Virus record (IMG/VR): IMGVR_UViG_3300032236_001850
Span: 1-64,000 of that record
DNA: 64,000 bases
Strand: one strand, 5' to 3'
A program made the translations under genes and the position numbers. The notes beneath the pieces were generated by a model. The model had not been told where the DNA came from. It saw only the letters and a list, made by a program, of their open reading frames with translations, and made no database searches. Positions 23,259-57,489 of this stretch are shown here, one piece after another; position 1 is the first letter of the stretch; every line of letters starts with the position of its first letter.

Positions 23259-23726
23259 ATGGATAAAGATCTAGCTGAAGCGGAAGCAAGAGTTCTAAAT
23301 TATATAAGAACAACCAAGGAATATTCTGAAATGAATTTCCAGGATAATAACAGTAAAATATGGGTTGCCCATAATTCGCTGATTGCCGCTGCCAAAATAT
23401 ACATCATCGACAATTATAAATTGATTGACGATTACACTGATCTTGATCTTATATTGAGAAGTGGAGCAACAGGCGGGAGGTTTTATTTTGGGCCAAAAAG
23501 AAACAGGGAGGTTTCTAGATCAAAGGAGTTAACCAGAATTTTAAAAGAACTGGATAACCAAACAATAGTTATAGAAAGCTTCGATGAAGCTATCTATGAC
23601 TGGACAGATGGGGATTTTTCAGTGGTGTTCAATGGTGAATCATACAATTGGATAGACGATGATTCAGTTATAAGTATAGCGTCTTACATAGAAAAAAAAT
23701 TAGAGGAAAATGAAATACAATATTGA
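23259..23726 (+). CDS. Hypothetical protein
   Basis: Start reassigned to MDKDLAE. Confidence 0.7.
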   Translation: MDKDLAEAEARVLNYIRTTKEYSEMNFQDNNSKIWVAHNSLIAAAKIYIIDNYKLIDDYTDLDLILRSGATGGRFYFGPKRNREVSRSKELTRILKELDNQTIVIESFDEAIYDWTDGDFSVVFNGESYNWIDDDSVISIASYIEKKLEENEIQY

Positions 23727-24828
23727 GGAAGTTAACGAATATGTGGCTAAGGGATTGGTTGATAAATGTGAGCATAAAGAACTCCCGATAGCAATCTATA
23801 AATATTCACGTAATTGTCAGTTCGAATGGATCTGGGATAACATCACGATGAATATGAGAGGTACCGTTCTCGATGAGAATGGAAACCTTATAGCCCGTAC
23901 ATTTCCTAAGTTTTTCAATATTGACGAGGGGAACATACCAAATTTACCATTTGAAGTTTTCGAAAAACTTGATGGTTCACTTGGTGTCCTATTCAACTAT
24001 GAGGGAGAATGGCATCTGGCAACACAAGGTTCATTCTATTCTGATATTGCTATTTATGCACAGGAGATATTGAAACGAAACGAAACTTATAAGGATGTGT
24101 TCTCTGAGAAATTTACTTTCCTTTTTGAAATCATATACCCAAAGAATCGAATAGTTTGTTCATATGGTGATGATGAGAAATTGGTGCTTCTTGCTGCTTT
24201 CAATACTAAATCAGGTAGAGAGGTTCCTTATCAGGAATTAAAGGACGTTGCGGAAAGAACTGGATTTGAATGTGCTAAAAGATATGATGGGATCAAGGAT
24301 CTTAAAAAGATAAAATCACTAATCGGTGATAATCAGGAGGGATTTGTTATAAGATTCTCTGATGGAACTAGAGTAAAAGCAAAGGGGGAGGAATATGTAA
24401 GGCTTCATGGGGTTCTGACATCGTTCTCCAACTTAGATATCTGGAGATGCTTAAAAGAGGGAAGCGATTATAGATCTTTAATGGTTGATGTTCCTGATGA
24501 ATATGATGCATGGGTTACAAACATTGAACAGGATCTCCAATCTAATTTTAATTTTATAGAGGCAACGGTAAAGGCCGAATATAAATTATTAGTAAAGAAA
24601 CTTAAAAGTCAAATCCCGACGGAGGAGGAAAGACAAGATCGAAACTCACCAGTACTTAAGGCATACAATAAGGAATTCTTTGAGCTTGTGGAAGGAAACA
24701 GATTAGCTGGGTATTTATTAGATCATCACAGAAATAAGGACTATTCAGGATCAATCTGGAATCAAATAAGGCCGGATTACGAAAAACCATTTTGGACAGA
24801 TTACTCATTAAAAAGAAATAAACCATGA
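23710..24828 (+). CDS. RNA ligase, T4 Rnl1-like
   Basis: Motif I EKLDGSLG, FEIIYPKNRIV, EGFVIRF, RVKAK. Confidence 0.88.
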   Translation: MKYNIEEVNEYVAKGLVDKCEHKELPIAIYKYSRNCQFEWIWDNITMNMRGTVLDENGNLIARTFPKFFNIDEGNIPNLPFEVFEKLDGSLGVLFNYEGEWHLATQGSFYSDIAIYAQEILKRNETYKDVFSEKFTFLFEIIYPKNRIVCSYGDDEKLVLLAAFNTKSGREVPYQELKDVAERTGFECAKRYDGIKDLKKIKSLIGDNQEGFVIRFSDGTRVKAKGEEYVRLHGVLTSFSNLDIWRCLKEGSDYRSLMVDVPDEYDAWVTNIEQDLQSNFNFIEATVKAEYKLLVKKLKSQIPTEEERQDRNSPVLKAYNKEFFELVEGNRLAGYLLDHHRNKDYSGSIWNQIRPDYEKPFWTDYSLKRNKP

Positions 24829-42613: not shown

Positions 42614-42829
42614 ATGAAAGCAAAAATAACAAAAAGTATGGCTTTAGCTATCGAGATAGGAATAGCAGAGCTTGAAAATAGCGGAATCTGGGAGGATGGT
42701 CTTTCCAAAAAGGAAATAAAGAAAACTTACAAGGGAATAGAGGAGCTTGAAATGCTTCTTAGTAAAATAGAACAAAACAAAAAGGAAAAAGAAAATGGAA
42801 AGAAAACTAGCGAGCATTCGGAAGATTAG
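42614..42829 (+). CDS. Hypothetical protein
   Basis: Intact ORF. Confidence 0.6.
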   Translation: MKAKITKSMALAIEIGIAELENSGIWEDGLSKKEIKKTYKGIEELEMLLSKIEQNKKEKENGKKTSEHSED

Positions 42830-43934
42830 TGATCTCCAGCCAATCGAGGGTGCTGACCTTATAGAATTGGCTATCGTTGATGGCTGGAAGGTTGTGGTTG
42901 CCAAAGAGGTTGGTCACAAGATTGGTAATTTTGTTATCTACTGTGAGGTTGATTCATTCCTTCCAATTAGAGAGGAATTTGAATTTCTAAGAAAAAGCTC
43001 ATATAGAAAGATGGCTGACGGGAATGAGGGATTCAGACTTAAAACCATAAAGCTTAGAGGTCAGGTTTCTCAGGGACTTATTCTACCGCTTTCCATATTG
43101 GAAGGCGAGGAAGAGGATGAAAAATTAGGGTACCTACAAACTCCTGATGGACCAATATACCAATTAGGTCCTTACGAGGGAGCTCTTGTTATTGAGGAAG
43201 GTGCTGATGTTACGGCTAAGCTTGGTATCATTAAATGGGATCCACCAATGCCTGCTGAATTAGCTGGTGTTGCAAAAGGAAACTTCCCAAGCTTCATCCC
43301 TAAAACTGACGAGGAGAGAATCCAAAATCTTGCAAAGAATTACGAGAAAATGAGATCCCAAAAGTACTATGTAACTGAAAAGCTAGATGGTTCATCTTCA
43401 ACATTCTACGTTTACAATGGAGAATTTGGGGTTTGTTCTAGAAATCTAGATCTTTGCCGTCCTGAACCTTTCGTTGAAGGCATGGTTATGTGCGAGGATG
43501 GGATAGAAAGACCTAAAAGGGAGAACACTTTCTGGAAAGTTGCAAGAGAACTTGGAATTGAGGAGAATATGCTTGATCTCAGTGGAAATCTTGCAATCCA
43601 GGGGGAAATCATAGGCGAGGGTGTGCAAGGTAATCCCTACAAGATCAAAGGTCAAACTCTTAGAGTTTACAATGCTTTTGATATTGATGCCCAAGAATAT
43701 TTAACTTTTGAAAAATTCAAGTTGACCGTTAAGGTTCTTGGATTGGAAACTGTGCCTATTATCGATGAGGATTTCACTTTACCAGAAACAATAGACGAGC
43801 TTCTAAAGTTTGCTGAGGGTAAATCAGTGCTTAATGCGTCTGCAGAGAGGGAAGGTTATGTGATTAGAAGTTTTGACATGACAACAAGCTTTAAAGTTAT
43901 ATCAAACAATTTCTTACTTAAGGAGAAAGAGTAA
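42795..43934 (+). CDS. RNA ligase, DRB0094/Rnl2-like with N-terminal OB-like domain
   Basis: RKLASIRKI..IEGAD.IE, FIPKTDEERIQN, TEKLDGSS, QGEIIG, EGYV, FKVISN. Confidence 0.9.
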   Translation: MERKLASIRKISDLQPIEGADLIELAIVDGWKVVVAKEVGHKIGNFVIYCEVDSFLPIREEFEFLRKSSYRKMADGNEGFRLKTIKLRGQVSQGLILPLSILEGEEEDEKLGYLQTPDGPIYQLGPYEGALVIEEGADVTAKLGIIKWDPPMPAELAGVAKGNFPSFIPKTDEERIQNLAKNYEKMRSQKYYVTEKLDGSSSTFYVYNGEFGVCSRNLDLCRPEPFVEGMVMCEDGIERPKRENTFWKVARELGIEENMLDLSGNLAIQGEIIGEGVQGNPYKIKGQTLRVYNAFDIDAQEYLTFEKFKLTVKVLGLETVPIIDEDFTLPETIDELLKFAEGKSVLNASAEREGYVIRSFDMTTSFKVISNNFLLKEKE

Positions 43935-48092: not shown

Positions 48093-48830
48093 ATGCCAAA
48101 ATTATACAAAGTAGGAGGTACAGTTCGGGATGCTATCCTTGGGATTGATTCCAAAGATATAGATTTCACTTTCGTGCTGGATGACTTAAACCAGACGGTC
48201 GAAGAGGGATTCCAAAAGATGGATGACTGGATGACGGAGAATGGATTTGAAATATTTCTCAGAGTTCCCGAAATGTACACCATTCGTGCTAGGTTTCCTA
48301 AAGGAGATCCAAACGAGAAACTGGTAGCAGATTTCGTGATGTCAAGAAAAGAAGTTGGCTACATTGAAGGAACAAGAAGACCTAAGCTTGAACTTGGAAC
48401 GCTGGAGGATGATTTAATTCGTAGAGACTTCACTATCAATGCGATGGCAGTGGACGAGGATGGGGAAATCATAGATCTGTTTGGTGGACAAGATGACCTA
48501 AGAATGGAGATATTAAGAACACCCAGGGATCCAATGATAACTCTAATGGATGATCCGCTAAGGCTTCTTCGTGCTATGAGATTTTGCATAACTAAGGATC
48601 TTGTTATCCATGACGACATCTGGGATGCTATGAAGCAACCAGCTCTGATTGATAAACTGAATCTCACAGTCAGCGGAGAGAGAATCAGAGAGGAGATTGA
48701 GAAGATGATGAAATTCGATACTGTTACATCAATGAGACTAATAACAGATTGTGACGATCACATGGAGGGAAAATTATTAAGAACACTATTCAAAGCAGGG
48801 CTTTGGCTAAAACCAACATTCAAACAATGA
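48093..48830 (+). CDS. tRNA nucleotidyltransferase / poly(A) polymerase family (class II head domain)
   Basis: VGGTVRD..DIDF, EDDLIRRDFTINAMA, DDPLRLLRAMRF, SGERIREE. Confidence 0.9.
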   Translation: MPKLYKVGGTVRDAILGIDSKDIDFTFVLDDLNQTVEEGFQKMDDWMTENGFEIFLRVPEMYTIRARFPKGDPNEKLVADFVMSRKEVGYIEGTRRPKLELGTLEDDLIRRDFTINAMAVDEDGEIIDLFGGQDDLRMEILRTPRDPMITLMDDPLRLLRAMRFCITKDLVIHDDIWDAMKQPALIDKLNLTVSGERIREEIEKMMKFDTVTSMRLITDCDDHMEGKLLRTLFKAGLWLKPTFKQ

Positions 48831-51145: not shown

Positions 51146-51374
51146 AAGAAATTTGAAGATGCCGGAGGGCAAGGTGGCTTCACAAGTTGCACATGCTGTT
51201 AAGAATCTTGGGATCACTCCGATTGATTCGATTATAGTGGTTCTTTGTGTTTCGGATAAGAAGTTTGAAGAGCTTGTTGCGGAACACCCAAATTGCTATG
51301 TACAAACGGATCTAGGTTTAACCTGCGTTGAAAGTGGTACACGTACTGCTGCAGCATGGATAGAGGAGGAATAA
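51123..51374 (+). CDS. pth2: Peptidyl-tRNA hydrolase, Pth2 family (minimal)
   Basis: LKMPEGKVASQVAHA and QTDLGLT.VESGTRTA match Pth2 GK.AAQ..HA and D.G.T...GT.T. Confidence 0.8.
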   Translation: MKIKAIYKRNLKMPEGKVASQVAHAVKNLGITPIDSIIVVLCVSDKKFEELVAEHPNCYVQTDLGLTCVESGTRTAAAWIEEE

Positions 51375-51820
51375 TGGTAAACAAAGTCAACATAAACAAC
51401 AGGAAAGCAAAGTTCGATTTCGAGTTCATTAGAACTCTAACTGCTGGTATGCAGCTGATGGGATCGGAAGTAAAGGCTATCCGAGATGGCAGAGTTTCCT
51501 TTGTGGATTCCTACTGTTACTTCAACGGCAAAGAACTTTTTCTAAAGAATCTAAATATAACTCCAATATCATCTACATATTCTCACGAACCCAACAGGGA
51601 GAGAAGGTTGCTTCTTAATAGAAGTGAACTTAGAAAACTTCAGAATGATATGGACAGAGGAATGACTATAGTTCCTTTTAGAATTTTTACAAATGAGAAG
51701 GGCTTGATCAAACTAGATATCGCACTTGCTAAGGGAAAGAAGAGTTACGACAAAAAAGAAAAAATAAAGGAGGCAGATATAAAAAGGGATACTAAAAGAT
51801 TCATTGCTGGAGATATATAG
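51374..51820 (+). CDS. smpB: SsrA-binding protein
   Basis: NRKAKFDF, AGMQLMGSEVKAIR, RERRLLLNRSE, IALAKGKK..DKK; TAATG-coupled to pth2. Confidence 0.95.
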   Translation: MVNKVNINNRKAKFDFEFIRTLTAGMQLMGSEVKAIRDGRVSFVDSYCYFNGKELFLKNLNITPISSTYSHEPNRERRLLLNRSELRKLQNDMDRGMTIVPFRIFTNEKGLIKLDIALAKGKKSYDKKEKIKEADIKRDTKRFIAGDI

Positions 51821-51838
51821 GTATAAAATCATACCTAT
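51812..51838 (+). promoter_or_regulatory. GATATATA motif plus initiation-region hairpin upstream of homing endonuclease
   Basis: GATATATA at 51812-51819; hairpin ATAGGTAT-AAAATC-ATACCTAT (51817-51838) ending 1 nt before ATG 51840. Confidence 0.7.
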
Positions 51839-51839
51839 T

Positions 51840-52874
51840 ATGAGACACAGTAAAAAATATCTGATTAATTATTTAATAGAAAATTATAACAAAAAAAGTA
51901 AATCCGAGATAATTAGTGAACTCGACCTTTCGTGGACATATCTGCAAAAAATAGCATCTTTAAATGGTATAAAAAGAGAATTTTGTGAAAATAAAAACGG
52001 AGGTAAATATTCAATATTAACAAATTATGATAATATTATAAGTTGTTATTGGTTAGGATTTATGTTAGCTGATGGTAATATAAGCAAAAAAAATAATATG
52101 ATGCTCAATTTAGCAATATGTGATAAAGATCATATACTCAAAATAGAAACTCATGTTGGAAAAACCTGCGTGTATTATAAAAAAGACAATATAATAACAA
52201 TTGTTTTGAATGATTCTGTTACATTTAAAAAAATAGCATCAGATTTCAATTGGAAAACTAATAAAACAAAAAACCCACCCGTTCTACCGGGATCAATGAG
52301 CCCTGATTGTATATTTTCAATGATCATCGGATTCATTGATGGTGATGGATGTATTGATGAAAGGTATGGACTGAAAGTTAAATGTGATGGATCGTGGCAA
52401 GACATGCTTAACTATTTCCATTTAATATTAACAGGTAATTCTAAAAAATATCAAATTAACAATAATGGTTATTCGGTATTTCGAGTGGGTGACATGGTTA
52501 AACTAAAGGATATAAAGAAAAAAATTTTAGACCTTGGTATTCCAGCTATGGATAGGAAGTGGGATAAAATAGATATTAATAGGATATACAAATCGGAGAA
52601 AAAATCTATTATTTCGGAGATGCTAAATAACGGGGATAACATGGAGTCGATATTAGAAAAAACAGGATTTAGCAAAACGTTATATTATTCAGTTGCAAAC
52701 AAGGAAGGAATAAATGTAAGAAAAAATAAAATATCCGATAATCAATCCGCATCGATAGTAACAATGTATAATAACGGAATTACTACCAGGGAGATATCTA
52801 GCTCACTCAAATTAAGTATATCAACAATACACAGACACATTAAAAAATACAAAGAAGCTAAAAGAAGTTTATAA
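51840..52874 (+). mobile_element. Free-standing double-motif LAGLIDADG homing endonuclease with C-terminal HTH-like region
   Basis: YWLGFMLADGNI and MIIGFIDGDGCI; HTH-like ITTREISSSLKLSISTIHRHI; more AT-rich than neighbours. Confidence 0.85.
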
Positions 52875-54868: not shown

Positions 54869-55453
54869 ATGGATTTGACAACCTACGTAGACTGGTGCAT
54901 AGCACAACACGATAACACCAACCACATGTACGACAAATATATTCCGTACAGTTTTCACCTGAGAATGGTAGATAGAGCAGCACAGCAATTTGAACACCTT
55001 TTGGATGATACTAAAGACATGCAAACTGGTAAATCTAGAGAGATTCTAGAGGGAAGCAGAATTGGATTCGTTTCTCTTAAAATGGCTTGTAGAAAAGCTT
55101 GCTGGGGACACGATACAATTGAGGACACAAGAACTTCCTACAACGATGCAGTTAACCATCTCGGTAAAGATGCAGCTGATATTGTTTATGCAGTTACCAA
55201 CGAGAAAGGTAAAAATCGTGCAGAAAGAGCCAATGACAAGTACTATGCTGGAATAGTAGAAACACCAGGAGCAGTTTTTGTTAAACTTTGCGACCGTATA
55301 GCTAATGTTCAATATGGTAAAATGACGGGGAGCTCAATGTACGACAAGTACAAAAAAGAAAATGCTAACTTTGTTACTAAACTTGGTGGTGACGACAAAG
55401 ACCACAAGCTAGCACCAATGTTCGAATATTTGTTGAATCTTTTTAAAGATTAG
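54869..55453 (+). CDS. Small alarmone hydrolase-like HD protein (RelA/SpoT HD type)
   Basis: PYSFHL..V, HDTIEDT, V..VT.EKG, VKLCDRIANV. Confidence 0.85.
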   Translation: MDLTTYVDWCIAQHDNTNHMYDKYIPYSFHLRMVDRAAQQFEHLLDDTKDMQTGKSREILEGSRIGFVSLKMACRKACWGHDTIEDTRTSYNDAVNHLGKDAADIVYAVTNEKGKNRAERANDKYYAGIVETPGAVFVKLCDRIANVQYGKMTGSSMYDKYKKENANFVTKLGGDDKDHKLAPMFEYLLNLFKD

Positions 55454-55456
55454 AAC

Positions 55457-56338
55457 ATGATAACAAGCTCAAATAAATTAGAGATATTTGAAAATTTCAT
55501 ATCGCTTCCCAAAAAATCTTTACAATCTGGATCAAAGATGGAAATTGGTACCAATGGTATCGGTAATTTTCTAATCAGTGGTGCTATGGAGAGAGACTCA
55601 AATTCTCTTACTGATTCAATAGAGGTACGTGCAGTTGATTATTTTCACTATCTGCATATGCACGAACACACTCTCAAGAGTTGGATCAAATTAAAAGGTG
55701 CGGAATTATTATTTCCAAAAAAGAAGATAACAAAAATCAGATACCAATCGGTTGATGAATTCTTTAATGATGTTAAGGAGTCAATCAAAACTCTGGAGGT
55801 AAATCCAGGTTCTGTTGAATTCTACACCAATGCCATAGAAACTGCAAAAGAAAATGGGCAAATAGCTTTCTTAGAAATTCTGAGGGATAAAAAGAACGGT
55901 GTTCTTGCGGAAGCTAAGTTATTGGAAGTTGGTGAAATCAAATATGTTACCGAGGAGGATGTTGTTAAATTTTACAAGAAAGCAAATCTGAAGGAAAGAA
56001 TGCTAAAGATGACGTGGATGAAAAACTACGCCAGAATGATTCCGGACGAAGTTATAGCGGAGAAGAAAAAATACGATGCTTCTGAGTTATTCGATAACTA
56101 TGTTATATTACATTTTGATAAATATGACAATTCCACCCAGATGACAAAGGCGGAGGTTGAGAAGGCCAAGGATCCAATTCTATTTGGTGTTCTTAAAGGA
56201 ACCAGAAAATTGTACTTTATAGGGGATTGGATTGACGAGTACTGTGATCTAACTTTGGATAAATTCCTATCAACTCTAGAAATGGAAGAAGCTAGAAAGC
56301 TTTCAGAGGAGTCAATAAAGGAAGGATTAAAAATGTAA
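55457..56338 (+). CDS. Hypothetical phage protein
   Basis: Intact ORF; DPILFG..LYFIGDWIDEYCD C-term. Confidence 0.8.
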   Translation: MITSSNKLEIFENFISLPKKSLQSGSKMEIGTNGIGNFLISGAMERDSNSLTDSIEVRAVDYFHYLHMHEHTLKSWIKLKGAELLFPKKKITKIRYQSVDEFFNDVKESIKTLEVNPGSVEFYTNAIETAKENGQIAFLEILRDKKNGVLAEAKLLEVGEIKYVTEEDVVKFYKKANLKERMLKMTWMKNYARMIPDEVIAEKKKYDASELFDNYVILHFDKYDNSTQMTKAEVEKAKDPILFGVLKGTRKLYFIGDWIDEYCDLTLDKFLSTLEMEEARKLSEESIKEGLKM

Positions 56339-56354: not shown

Positions 56355-56386
56355 TTTTTTTATTCCGGAAGAATTTCATATATTTG
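56355..56386 (+). promoter_or_regulatory. Conserved 32-bp promoter (copy 9), probably driving the ncRNA cluster
   Basis: TTTTTTTATTCCG-N11-TATATTTG. Confidence 0.85.
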
Positions 56387-56405: not shown

Positions 56406-56654
56406 ATGGCAAAGAACAAGATACAGGAAGAGATATACAAGGCAGAAGGACTTAGACGAATGCTTGCTAGAAAAAAGCAGAGATTCGAAAAGTACAGAAC
56501 CCTTGCTATTGAAGCTAGAGATCTAGGAATTCCTTTAGCAGGAGCAAGACTTGGAGGATCTTGGCCAGACCCAGATTCCCCAACAGGATATTCCCAGAAA
56601 TGCTCGTATGAGGCATGGGGAACATGTCAATCACCATGTAACGGTGATTGCTAA
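56406..56654 (+). CDS. Hypothetical protein, Cys-rich C-terminus
   Basis: First ORF after the promoter. Confidence 0.7.
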   Translation: MAKNKIQEEIYKAEGLRRMLARKKQRFEKYRTLAIEARDLGIPLAGARLGGSWPDPDSPTGYSQKCSYEAWGTCQSPCNGDC

Positions 56655-56661
56655 TAAGATT

Positions 56662-56720
56662 TGGTACGTAGCTTAGTGGTAGAGCTTTACAGCGGGAGTT
56701 CGATTCTTTCCGTGCCGGCA
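56662..56720 (+). ncRNA. tRNA-like RNA lacking an anticodon arm (mimic or tRNA pseudogene)
   Basis: Acceptor TGGTACG/CGTGCCG; D arm GCTT-AGTGGTA-GAGC; T arm GGGAG-TTCGATT-CTTTC; only an 8-nt linker TTTACAGC between them. Confidence 0.65.
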
Positions 56721-56888
56721 AAGCAGTTTTTATGATGCATCTCCATCGACAGAGAACGTTGTTTTAGATTTAAAAATAATGTTAATGTGGTCGGGTAGTT
56801 TAAAAGTTTTCCTAGCCTTAAGGAAAAGTACGGATGGGTTTGCAGAAGACAGTTTCCGAGCCTAGTGGAAAAGTCGGTATATAAACAG

Positions 56889-56916
56889 GGGAATCGGTCG
56901 GCTTTAACCGATTCCC
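56889..56916 (+). other. Perfect 10-bp hairpin preceding the second tRNA-like RNA
   Basis: GGGAATCGGT-CGGCTTTA-ACCGATTCCC. Confidence 0.8.
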
Positions 56917-56920
56917 AACA

Positions 56921-57048
56921 GGGGGAATAGACCAGGCGGTATGGTACGTCTCTAGCTTATATTATAGATAGAATCTATGACGTCTTCACACTAAGACGAA
57001 GCTTAGATGATTCAAGTGTCACAGGTTCGATTCCTGTTTCCCTCACTA
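56921..57048 (+). ncRNA. tRNA-like RNA with anticodon arm replaced by a branched domain
   Basis: Acceptor GGGGGAA/TTCCCTC + ACTA; D-like ACCA-GGCGGTA-TGGT; T arm ACAGG-TTCGATT-CCTGT; inner hairpins ATAGAT/ATCTAT and CGTCTT/AAGACG. Confidence 0.7.
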
Positions 57049-57049
57049 A

Positions 57050-57400
57050 CCGCGTCACTGTAAGCTGCAGTGATAACTGGACACGAACCAAGGTGGTTCC
57101 GCGGATCACCAATAAAATCGTCTGAGGCAGAGTCCAAGTCCAGGGTTAGGATATTGAGTCTACTACATAACGGCACGTGAAATTAATACCGACATGTACT
57201 GTCTGGCAGGTCAGGCTAGGCTCATTGGAACATGTTCTTCGTGGTGGATAGAACGGTATTTTATAGGATGGACGCATTGGTAATAGTTAGGTAAGGAGAG
57301 AACTGCAGTGGGCTGCTGCACTACACCTCGAGAAAAATCGCAAGATAAAACTGCCAATTTAGATGGGAGAACTAAGCCATCCAATAGAATACCAAACACA
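57050..57400 (+). ncRNA. Candidate structured ncRNA (unassigned)
   Basis: GC-richer ORF-poor region with several nested helices. Confidence 0.45.
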
Positions 57401-57420
57401 GAAGAAAATTATTATTGTTA

Positions 57421-57452
57421 TTTTTTTAATCCGAATTATTACCATATATTTG
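57421..57452 (+). promoter_or_regulatory. Conserved 32-bp promoter (copy 10), inside a perfect 15-bp inverted repeat
   Basis: TTTTTTTAATCCG-N11-TATATTTG; arms 57428-57442 / 57454-57468. Confidence 0.85.
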
Positions 57453-57489
57453 TGTAATAATTCGGATTTTTAATTTTAAATAAAAACTT

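What the first reader, a model, noticed from the sequence alone, without database searches (positions are those of the whole stretch)
56889..57048. tRNA-like RNA whose anticodon arm is replaced by a three-way junction
Seen: acceptor GGGGGAA/TTCCCTC with discriminator A and CTA, D-like hairpin with GG loop, and a perfect T arm. Between them a long stem (TCTAGCTT/AAGCTTAGA, one bulge) closes two perfect 6-bp hairpins (ATAGAT-AGA-ATCTAT; CGTCTT-CACACT-AAGACG). A perfect 10-bp hairpin ends 4 nt upstream. The tidy pairing of the insert argues against random decay. Both tRNA-like RNAs here keep the elbow and acceptor and alter only the anticodon domain. Inference: a possibly undescribed class of phage tRNA-mimic ncRNA (mini-tmRNA-like, decoy or scaffold), processed by RNase P and CCA enzyme and possibly partnered with phage SmpB/Pth2.
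Basis: partly seen in the sequence, partly recalled or inferred. Interest (0 to 1): 0.82.

Follow-up and report, generated by a model that had tools for sequence, protein, structure and literature searches.

The report
Phage tRNA look-alike lacking an anticodon
A 434-kb freshwater phage carries a tRNA-shaped RNA gene, found in RNA libraries, whose anticodon arm is replaced by a small three-way junction; it is a divergent member of an apparently undescribed set of non-decoding tRNA look-alikes that sit where related phages keep their tRNA genes.

Summary
Window 56921-57045 (+) has a 7-bp acceptor stem, a D-like hairpin with GG, a perfect T arm and discriminator A. A stem closing two hairpins takes the place of the anticodon arm, and a 10-bp hairpin ends 4 nt upstream. 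Rfam scores it as tRNA only marginally (30.8 bits against a cut-off of 29). ARAGORN calls nothing. No single excision restores an anticodon arm. It is not a tmRNA (no G3:U70, no tag frame) and not a Y RNA.

The three-way junction occurs only in three phages about 88% identical. Phages of similar relatedness carry, at the same place and with the same flanks, a tRNA-Phe-like body with a conserved AGUAC/GGAA internal loop plus hairpin instead. That form is a strongly covarying, phage-only family (10 members, 14 of 25 pairs compensatory).

The element lies in a roughly 0.8-kb noncoding array of closed RNA domains and odd tRNA look-alikes. Metatranscriptome contigs cover the array. SmpB, a CCA-type nucleotidyltransferase and RNA ligases are encoded nearby.

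Best reading: a non-decoding, tRNA-derived module matured like a tRNA, so that it punctuates and stabilises the array. Processing and function are inferred, not shown.

The parts
56379..56386 (+). TATATTTG, a candidate Bacteroidota-type -7 promoter box for the transcript that carries the 82-aa ORF and the RNA array
   Evidence: One search gives the position, 20 nt before the ATG at 56406. The motif is not enriched window-wide. A 761-nt metatranscriptome contig of a relative begins at about 56387. The promoter role is inferred.
56406..56654 (+). 82-aa ORF with a Cys-rich C-terminus. In distant phages its homologue sits directly after smpB and is nearly always followed by an armless tRNA-like RNA
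56662..56718 (+). Armless tRNA-like RNA (acceptor, D arm, T arm, no anticodon arm).
   Evidence: Rfam tRNA 34.2 bits. Twelve orthologues show a covarying acceptor stem
56719..56888 (+). Block A, a conserved structured RNA domain of unknown kind
   Evidence: RNAalifold on 7 relatives: 13 pairs with compensatory changes
56889..56916 (+). 10-bp hairpin ending 4 nt (AACA) before the tRNA-like 5' end
   Evidence: one compensatory pair. A different hairpin occupies the same place in L092 and L184
56921..57045 (+). The tRNA-like RNA of the finding: acceptor, D-like hairpin, T arm and discriminator A
56947..57009 (+). The three-way junction that stands in for the anticodon arm: bulged closing stem, hairpin 1 (56962-56980) and hairpin 2 (56981-56998)
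   Evidence: Fold. Across window, L002 and L003: one G-C to A-U compensatory pair, wobble-compatible one-sided changes at 4 further pairs, one pair broken in two sequences. Found only in three contigs
57010..57020 (+). Extended variable region AUUCAAGUGUC. Its last five bases, GUGUC, match the variable loop of the orthologues and of tRNA-Phe
57046..57149 (+). Block C, a closed and highly conserved RNA domain that starts at the base after the discriminator
   Evidence: 35 predicted pairs and almost no sequence variation, so no covariation test is possible. This stretch is held in all four RNA runs
57153..57226 (+). Block D, a closed RNA domain
   Evidence: 3 compensatory pairs in the closing stem
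57258..57397 (+). Block E, a closed RNA domain shared by every relative in which this stretch was recovered, including L008
51356..51820 (+). Phage smpB
   Evidence: Pfam PF01668, E 8.9e-47; tblastn
48093..48830 (+). PolyA_pol head-domain protein (CCA-adding enzyme family)
   Evidence: Pfam PF01743, E 3e-20

Best explanation
The element is a non-decoding, tRNA-derived module. It descends from a tRNA-Phe-like gene and is the local orthologue of a phage family in which the anticodon loop is replaced by an AGUAC/GGAA internal loop plus hairpin. In this lineage the D arm has drifted and that arm has been swapped for a three-way junction.

It is co-transcribed with an 82-aa ORF and four other closed RNA domains, probably from a promoter near 56379. 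Only the acceptor/T-arm stack and the elbow are kept. These are the parts that RNase P, RNase Z and CCA-adding enzymes recognise.

The most likely mechanism is that the host tRNA-processing enzymes cut at 56920/56921 and after A57045. That would release a stable RNA of about 125 nt. It would also define the hairpin-protected 3' end of the upstream domain and the base-paired 5' end of the downstream one. The phage's own CCA-type enzyme may then add CCA.

Shown: the structure, conservation of the tRNA body, loss of any anticodon arm, presence in RNA libraries, and the modular layout. Inferred: the cleavages, CCA addition, stability, and any function of the junction itself.
For: tRNA body: Rfam tRNA hit. 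Across 8 orthologues, pairs 2:71 and 7:66 change on both sides and 93.8% of cells are paired, against about 55% when the partners are slid.

No anticodon arm: ARAGORN calls nothing, and no single excision restores a canonical arm in any orthologue.

Orthology: the upstream hairpin plus AACA, the acceptor, G10, the variable loop GUGUC, the T arm and the trailer ACUAACC are all shared with the S-turn forms.

The S-turn family is real: 14 of 25 pairs are compensatory and 0 of 500 shuffles reach the observed values. My model R1 gives members 74-110 bits, canonical tRNAs at most 63, and the window element 32.

Modular layout: every block is a closed domain that abuts a tRNA-like element. Relatives gain or lose whole tRNA-like units at block borders. 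L090 has the element and Block C without Block A; L092 and L184 have Block A and the element without Block C.

RNA: four metatranscriptome runs hold the array. One 761-nt contig at depth 41 starts near the candidate promoter, while the upstream gene is at depth 2.9. A 193-nt contig that is 99% identical covers 56991-57180.

Shared processing signature: the trailers (discriminator followed by CAA or CUA, no encoded CCA) match those of canonical tRNAs in related phages.

Context: CCA-type enzyme, SmpB and RNA ligases are encoded nearby.
Against: No read-level ends were available. The RNA contigs run across both borders of the element, which shows a precursor (or contaminating DNA) rather than a processed product. 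RNA libraries can contain DNA, and the flanking genes of the relatives may simply fall below the 85% likeness limit. Covariation for the junction itself rests on three sequences and is not significant (115 of 500 shuffles). The element evolves at about the same rate as the rest of the array. A pure processing signal would not need a maintained arm, yet arms are maintained by compensatory changes in each lineage.
Confidence: 0.45

Rival explanations
1. It is a trans-acting tRNA mimic. After tRNA-like maturation, the RNA itself is the product. The replaced arm would be a binding surface for a protein or the ribosome. Possible roles are a decoy or sponge for tRNA-binding defence or repair enzymes, or a partner of phage SmpB.
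For: Arms are kept by compensatory changes in each lineage, and the internal loop of the S-turn family is invariant while its helices covary. SmpB lies within 5 kb in the window clade. In distant phages smpB is directly followed by the 82-aa gene, which in turn is followed by the armless tRNA-like RNA. The window is rich in RNA-repair genes.
Against: The window's junction shares nothing with the conserved S-turn arm, so any common partner would have to bind the tRNA body. There is no G3:U70. S-turn members in L188-L194 have no smpB or 82-aa gene within the fetched flanks. No partner has been identified.
Confidence: 0.22
2. It is a decaying copy. The window lineage lost the functional S-turn arm, and what remains is a transcribed, slowly eroding pseudo-tRNA-like relic with no function of its own.
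For: It scores only 32 bits on the S-turn model. The D arm has drifted (10 of 17 positions identical, read) and shifted register. The junction is confined to three close relatives. Its substitution rate is similar to the surroundings. Covariation is not significant.
Against: Of the 8 variable pairs inside the tRNA-like element among the three phages, 7 stay paired. The acceptor and T arm are intact. The extra sequence folds into tidy helices rather than random insertions.
Confidence: 0.2
3. It is one domain of a single large ornate phage RNA, in the manner of GOLLD or ROOL with embedded tRNAs, and is not an independent RNA.
For: An array of about 0.8 kb of closed, conserved domains lies in a tRNA-island position of a lake phage. 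GOLLD and ROOL are phage RNAs found near tRNA islands, and tRNAs sometimes sit in the GOLLD linker. RNA contigs span several domains.
Against: There is no Rfam hit to GOLLD, ROOL or any large RNA, even at E up to 10 in an 841-nt search. Domains are gained, lost and recombined independently between relatives.
Confidence: 0.1
4. It is a tRNA with an unconventional intron that is cut out and resealed by phage RNA-repair enzymes (Rnl1-type ligase and kinase/phosphatase).
For: In the S-turn relatives, removing GUAC..hairpin..AAG between nucleotides 33 and 34 leaves CAGAACA, UAGAAAC or CAGAAAA, which is the tRNA-Phe loop CUGAAAA with A33. From established knowledge of T4, 33/34 is where PrrC cuts tRNA-Lys and T4 Rnl1 seals. 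The window encodes an Rnl1-like ligase, a second RNA ligase, and cREC_REC and AAA_33 proteins.
Against: For the window element, no excision yields an anticodon arm, and the candidate anticodon would differ between window and L002 because the changes there are complementary. There is no bulge-helix-bulge motif. It is too short for a group I intron. RNA contigs keep the insert. Phages with S-turn members already carry a canonical tRNA-Phe.
Confidence: 0.04

Closest known systems
Canonical tRNA (Rfam RF00005), most like tRNA-Phe
   Same: 7-bp acceptor stem, U8, a D hairpin with GG, variable loop GUGUC, a 5-bp T stem with UUCGAUU, discriminator A, and no encoded CCA, as in the tRNAs of related phages.
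   Different: No 5-bp anticodon stem with a 7-nt loop. About 60 extra nucleotides form a three-way junction, and the variable region is 11 nt. ARAGORN rejects it, and the Rfam score is barely above the cut-off.
S-turn tRNA-like family, defined here (model R1; members include L091 6940-7029 and L189 4539-4635)
   Same: Same locus and flanks, and the same acceptor, T arm, variable loop and trailer. Both have a tRNA body with the anticodon loop replaced by extra structure.
   Different: Lacks the invariant AGUAC/GGAA internal loop and the canonical D arm. It scores 32 bits where members score 74-110.
tmRNA tRNA-like domain with SmpB
   Same: Same topology: acceptor and T arm kept, with the anticodon arm replaced by a helix leading to further structure. 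The phage encodes SmpB.
   Different: No G3:U70, no tag reading frame, no pseudoknots, only 125 nt, and no Rfam tmRNA hit.
T4 species 1 RNA (rnaC) in the T4 tRNA cluster
   Same: A stable phage RNA encoded inside a tRNA cluster, with a T arm (CCGGG-UUCGAAU-CCCGG) and a non-tRNA core.
   Different: No sequence similarity and a different core. rnaC has no clean 7-bp acceptor plus D arm in the fold.
mascRNA behind MALAT1, and the tRNA-like units of murine gammaherpesvirus 68 (from my own knowledge, not tested here)
   Same: A tRNA-shaped, non-decoding module. Cleavage by RNase P or RNase Z defines the ends of neighbouring structured RNAs, and a protective structure sits just upstream of the cut.
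   Different: These are eukaryotic nuclear or viral systems. No homology is implied.
YrlA (bacterial and phage Y RNA with a tRNA-like domain)
   Same: A non-decoding tRNA mimic in phages. A TROVE gene lies near the equivalent locus of one distant relative, L177.
   Different: Rfam YrlA scores 17 bits against a cut-off of 69. The D-like hairpin that the alignment used is not conserved. No TROVE match was found in the window.

Membership tests
tRNA (RF00005) | 7-bp acceptor stem, discriminator, and 5-bp T stem with a UUCRANY loop | tested here: met
   Covariation in 8 orthologues.
tRNA (RF00005) | D arm with G18 G19 | tested here: met
   ACCA/UGGU with loop GGCGGUA. The register is shifted by one relative to the canonical orthologues.
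tRNA (RF00005) | 5-bp anticodon stem and 7-nt loop with U33 and a purine at 37 | tested here: not met
   Fold; ARAGORN finds nothing; excision scan.
tRNA (RF00005) | Score at or above the Rfam gathering cut-off | tested here: inconclusive
   30.8 bits against 29 in local searches, but the hit is not reported in the whole-window gathering search.
Intron-containing tRNA | Removing one segment restores a canonical anticodon arm with a conserved anticodon | tested here: not met
   No solution exists in L002, L003 or the other orthologues. The window gives only spurious solutions. Changes at the would-be anticodon are complementary, not conserved.
Intron-containing tRNA | A recognisable intron class (group I, or archaeal bulge-helix-bulge) | tested here: not met
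   No Rfam intron hit. The insert is about 60 nt. By inspection of the fold there are no two 3-nt bulges separated by a 4-bp helix.
tmRNA | G3:U70 alanine identity pair | tested here: not met
   Pair 3:70 is G-C in all 8 orthologues.
tmRNA | Tag reading frame with resume codon and pseudoknots; Rfam tmRNA models | tested here: not met
   No tmRNA hit here. A short AUG..UAA frame in hairpin 2 is not conserved in L002.
tmRNA | SmpB partner encoded by the same genome | tested here: met
   51356-51820, PF01668, E 8.9e-47.
YrlA / Y RNA | Rfam YrlA model, and an adjacent Ro60 (TROVE) gene | tested here: not met
   17 bits against 69. No TROVE match in the window by tblastn, using only a 62-aa fragment as query, so this is a weak test.
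AAGGAAm internal loop and a canonical GCUC/GAGC D arm | tested here: not met
   R1 gives 32.3 bits where members score 74-110. Alignment.
GOLLD / ROOL large phage RNAs | Match to the Rfam models | tested here: not met
   No hit at E up to 10.
tRNA-like processing module (mascRNA type) | Cleavage by RNase P at the 5' end and RNase Z at the 3' end, followed by CCA addition | not testable with these tools
   Only assembled RNA contigs were available, with no read ends.

The most novel reading that the evidence does not exclude
The window element, the S-turn family and the armless RNAs next to the 82-aa/smpB genes together form a new class of phage-encoded, non-decoding tRNA mimics. They would be matured like tRNAs and act in trans on the translation, tRNA-repair or defence machinery, with the former anticodon arm serving as an exchangeable functional arm. 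A sharper variant of this reading: the S-turn members are tRNA-Phe genes with a new kind of protein-dependent 33/34 intron that is sealed by phage RNA ligase.
Probability: 0.22. Interest if true: 0.85.

Novelty: new variant of a known kind. Interest (0 to 1): 0.62.

Why it matters
Phage tRNA islands are usually read only as codon-usage or anti-defence supplements. In this phage clade the canonical tRNAs at one such locus are replaced by an array, present in RNA libraries, of tRNA look-alikes that cannot decode. One of them belongs by descent to a strongly covarying, phage-only family that neither Rfam nor the literature I searched describes.

If these RNAs are matured like tRNAs, they are a bacterial-virus counterpart of mascRNA-type punctuation, and a natural version of the 'tRNA scaffold' used to stabilise recombinant RNAs. 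If they act in trans, they point to a new layer of phage interference with translation or tRNA-targeting defence. Their proximity to SmpB, a CCA-type enzyme and RNA ligases makes this directly testable.

Tried and rejected
- **Known Rfam families.** Whole-window and local scans, including permissive ones, gave only tRNA. YrlA, tmRNA, ribozymes, GOLLD, ROOL and RNase P were absent or far below cut-off.
- **ARAGORN.** It calls no tRNA or tmRNA in the window. Its calls on the relatives disagree with each other (Thr, Tyr, or a 4-nt anticodon), so I disregarded them.
- **Phage GenBank collection.** No similar DNA was found.
- **Intron hypothesis.** The excision scan rejects it for this element.
- **Hammerhead-type reading of the three-way junction.** The junction has no conserved core and no Rfam hit.
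- **Y RNA reading.** The D-like hairpin in Block C is not conserved, and a different hairpin is.
- **Hidden tmRNA in the array.** There are only two T arms in 64 kb, each with a nearby acceptor partner.
- **More three-way-junction members.** Two pattern scans of IMG/VR found only the same three contigs.
- **Cellular genomes.** Two scans with S-turn patterns found nothing.
- **Pseudoknot.** A possible pairing between the hairpin-2 loop (ACACU) and the variable region (AGUGU) has 5 bp in the window but 4 bp in L002 and L003. It is unsupported.
- **Read-level RNA ends.** These could not be obtained. The single read-laying run returned contigs only.

Full report
**Source and setting**

The window is the first 64 kb of IMGVR_UViG_3300032236_001850, a 434.5-kb phage contig, and window coordinates equal contig coordinates. 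GC content is about 36%. A type IX secretion sorting domain suggests a Bacteroidota host. So do TATATTTG boxes just upstream of several ORF starts. The host assignment is an inference; the motif consensus comes from my own knowledge of Bacteroides promoters, and the motif is not enriched window-wide. DNA and RNA runs that hold the region are freshwater, pond and river metagenomes.

**The observation**

- The upstream 10-bp hairpin is 56889-56916, followed by AACA.
- The tRNA-like RNA is 56921-57045.
- It has a 7-bp acceptor stem (one G.U pair), U8, a 4-bp D-like hairpin with a GG loop, a perfect T arm with UUCGAUU, and discriminator A followed by CUA.
- Between the D and T arms, a bulged 5+5-bp stem closes an 8-bp hairpin (loop AGA) and a 6-bp hairpin (loop CACACU). 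An 11-nt variable region follows.

The Rfam tRNA model scores it at 30.8 bits (cut-off 29, E 2.5e-4 to 9e-4), but only in local searches. The whole-window gathering search misses it, and ARAGORN calls nothing. The fold is better than 197 of 200 shuffles. In the whole 64 kb, only this element and 56662-56718 combine a T arm with a fully complementary acceptor.

**Relatives with the same junction**

Only two other contigs carry it: L002 (79.9 kb) and L003 (430 kb), both about 88% identical. On the three sequences, 98% of cells pair.
- One pair of the closing stem changes G-C to A-U on both sides.
- One pair of the upstream hairpin does likewise.
- Seven pairs in all, including one in the acceptor and two in the upstream hairpin, vary on one side in a wobble-compatible way.
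- One pair of the outer stem is broken in two sequences.

With three sequences this is not significant: 115 of 500 shuffles reach the observed values.

**Orthologues with other arms**

Flanking proteins led to more distant phages. At the same position there is an element with nearly the same features:
- the same upstream hairpin plus AACA;
- the same acceptor and variable loop (GUGUC or GUGCC);
- the same T arm and the same trailer, ACUAACC.

The interior differs. L091/L089, L172/L173 and L090 have a canonical D arm, a short stem, a 5x5 internal loop (CAGUA opposite GAACA) and a hairpin. L092 and L184 have a third kind of irregular arm.

Across the eight orthologues, acceptor pairs 2:71 and 7:66 change on both sides, and 93.8% of body cells pair. 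Within each arm type, hairpin stems show compensatory changes: C-G to U-A between L091 and L172, U-A to C-G between L091 and L090, and G-C to A-U between L092 and L184.

So the tRNA body is constrained, the arm is maintained within a lineage, and the arm is exchanged between lineages whose flanking 293-aa protein is about as similar to the window's (82-88% identity).

**The S-turn family**

The AGUAC...GGAA form is widespread. Pattern scans of IMG/VR and contigs fetched through the 82-aa protein raised it to ten distinct members. Their acceptor and T stems are completely different from one another.
- 14 of 25 pairs have compensatory changes, including all seven acceptor pairs.
- 95.9% of cells pair.
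- No shuffle out of 500 reaches the observed values.

A covariance model built from eight members scores members at 74-110 bits and canonical tRNAs at 63 or less. It scores the window element at 32.3.

Invariant stretches are the D arm (UAGCUCAGU..GG.UAGAGCAA), yAGUACUU...AAGGAAm, and the variable-loop core GUG.C, usually CGUGCC. The internal loop matches the AGUA/GAA bulged-G (sarcin-ricin, loop E) consensus. That match rests on my own knowledge of the motif and has not been tested structurally.

The body is closest to canonical tRNA-Phe(GAA) of the same phages. Some members lie inside arrays of 13-35 ordinary tRNAs that already include tRNA-Phe. Two scans of 185,579 bacterial and archaeal genomes with S-turn patterns found nothing. 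I found no description of the family in the papers searched.

**What the window element is not**

- *Not an intron-containing tRNA by canonical rules.* No single excision restores a 5-bp stem and a 7-nt loop with U33 and R37 in any orthologue. Only spurious solutions appear, and only in the window. The would-be anticodon changes in a complementary rather than a conserved way.
- *Not a tmRNA.* Pair 3:70 is G-C throughout. There is no conserved tag frame and no pseudoknots, and no tmRNA hit covers this element.
- *Not YrlA.* It scores 17 bits against a cut-off of 69, and the D-like hairpin that alignment used is not conserved.
- *Not GOLLD or ROOL.* There is no hit.

**Surroundings**

The element lies in a noncoding stretch, 56655-57489. 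In order, it contains:
- an armless tRNA-like RNA (56662-56718);
- Block A, with 13 covarying pairs;
- the hairpin;
- the element;
- Block C, whose closing stem starts at the base after the discriminator;
- Block D;
- Block E;
- an AT-rich hairpin followed by a T-run around 57423-57470 (read).

Relatives insert or delete whole tRNA-like units exactly at block borders. L002 and L003 have three extra units, L091 has one of about 153 nt, and L008 has a different block. L090 has the element with Block C but without Block A. L092 and L184 have Block A and the element without Block C. This modularity argues against one obligatory large RNA.

Nearby genes:
- SmpB at 51356-51820;
- a LAGLIDADG endonuclease at 51804-52874;
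- a PolyA_pol head-domain protein at 48093-48830;
- two RNA ligases, at 42795-43934 and 23710-24828;
- an HD-domain protein at 54869-55453;
- cREC_REC and AAA_33 proteins, whose ORFs the summary scan does not identify.

No PTH2 domain was found among ORFs of 95 aa or more.

**RNA evidence**

Four metatranscriptome runs from four studies hold the array.
- In X18, a 761-nt contig of an S-turn-type relative at depth 41 runs from about 56387 to beyond 57153. Its start is just after the TATATTTG box at 56379-56386. The contig over the upstream 293-aa gene has depth 2.9.
- In X15, a 193-nt contig with two differences covers 56991-57180. That stretch includes the 3' part of the three-way junction, the T arm and Block C.

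These are assembled contigs. They cross the element's borders and give no ends. The tool itself warns that RNA libraries can contain DNA, and that runs found with a given stretch cover it by selection.

**Mechanism**

What is conserved is the part of a tRNA that RNase P, RNase Z and CCA-adding enzymes recognise (established knowledge of those enzymes). Three features fit tRNA-type punctuation of a co-transcribed ncRNA array:
- a protective hairpin sits 4 nt before the 5' end;
- a closed domain begins one base after the discriminator;
- the trailer (discriminator followed by CUA or CAA, no encoded CCA) matches that of canonical tRNAs in related phages.

Cleavage would also release a stable RNA of about 125 nt. 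I take this as the most likely mechanism, with confidence 0.45.

The rivals are a trans-acting mimic, a decaying relic of the S-turn family, one domain of a single large RNA, and an unconventional intron. Each is listed separately with the result that would refute it.

**Verdict**

The three-way junction is a lineage-specific variant rather than the hallmark of a class. The wider phenomenon appears undescribed: phage tRNA islands populated by non-decoding tRNA look-alikes, including a strongly covarying S-turn family and an armless RNA tied to an smpB-linked small gene. It is directly testable.

Noticed in passing
window 56662-56718 (also L172 3257-3315, L177 3268-3326, L174 3268-3326, L180 2425-2483, L185 526-583): An armless tRNA-like RNA of 57-59 nt (acceptor, 5-bp D arm, short linker, T arm) starts 4-14 nt after the stop of the 82-aa gene in the 12 phages aligned; two other contigs with the gene (L167, L183) did not align. 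This holds even where the protein is only 50-60% identical. The acceptor stem covaries. In several of these phages the gene directly follows smpB. Topologically it resembles an isolated tmRNA tRNA-like domain, but it has no G3:U70.
   Followed up: partly
L091 6940-7029, L172 3517-3606, L090 1802-1903, L180 2917-3006, L182 1634-1720, L188 4563-4651(-), L189 4539-4635(-), L190 7115-7212(-), L192 1407-1507, L193 8950-9048: A phage-only family with a tRNA-Phe-like body in which the anticodon loop is replaced by an invariant AGUAC/GGAA internal loop plus a variable hairpin. Deleting GUAC..AAG between nucleotides 33 and 34 would leave CAGAACA, UAGAAAC or CAGAAAA, which is close to the tRNA-Phe loop CUGAAAA.
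   Followed up: yes
window 56719-56888, 57046-57149, 57153-57226, 57258-57397: Four conserved, closed RNA domains of unknown kind. Block A has 13 covarying pairs. Block C is almost invariant and is the stretch held in all four metatranscriptome runs. No Rfam family matches any of them.
   Followed up: partly
L091 7277-7429: A class II (long variable arm) tRNA-like element that scores 40.6 bits on Rfam tRNA. It carries a stem-closed insert of about 50 nt in the anticodon loop, and removing the insert leaves the 7-nt loop CUCCAAA.
   Followed up: partly
L002 8249-8324, 8411-8512, 8529-8596; L008 6659-6749, 6994-7132: Further odd tRNA-like units (acceptor plus T arm with non-tRNA cores; two of them have a second T-arm-like hairpin in the D position). 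They are gained and lost between close relatives at the borders of the RNA blocks.
   Followed up: partly
L178 3387-4080: What looks like the 5' half of a tRNA gene is followed by an insert of about 650 nt that appears to contain an ORF. This may be an intron with a homing endonuclease.
   Followed up: no
window 55457-56338: A 293-aa protein (PHROG 10081, annotated 'transposase', no Pfam hit) has homologues next to tRNA arrays in several other phages, for example 11 tRNAs just upstream in L009.
   Followed up: no
window 23710-24828, 42795-43934, 48093-48830, 51356-51820, 51804-52874: A cluster of translation and RNA-repair genes: an Rnl1-like ligase, a PHA02142-type RNA ligase, a CCA-type nucleotidyltransferase head domain, SmpB, and a LAGLIDADG endonuclease that overlaps the end of smpB. 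cREC_REC, AAA_33 and NUDIX proteins lie elsewhere in the window.
   Followed up: partly
L092 1530-1900 and L184 3040-3230: Tandem repeats of an RNA-like module (a hairpin AAAGUUUCUUU..AAGAAAG followed by UACGG or UAAGG). The module resembles the central hairpin of Block A.
   Followed up: no
window 57423-57470: A 13-bp AT-rich hairpin followed by a T-run carries the next TATATTTG box in its loop. The terminator of the RNA array and the promoter of the next gene may therefore overlap.
   Followed up: no
window 56987-56992 with 57015-57019: The hairpin-2 loop (ACACU) is complementary to AGUGU in the variable region, giving a possible 5-bp pseudoknot. It is weakened to 4 bp in L002 and L003.
   Followed up: partly
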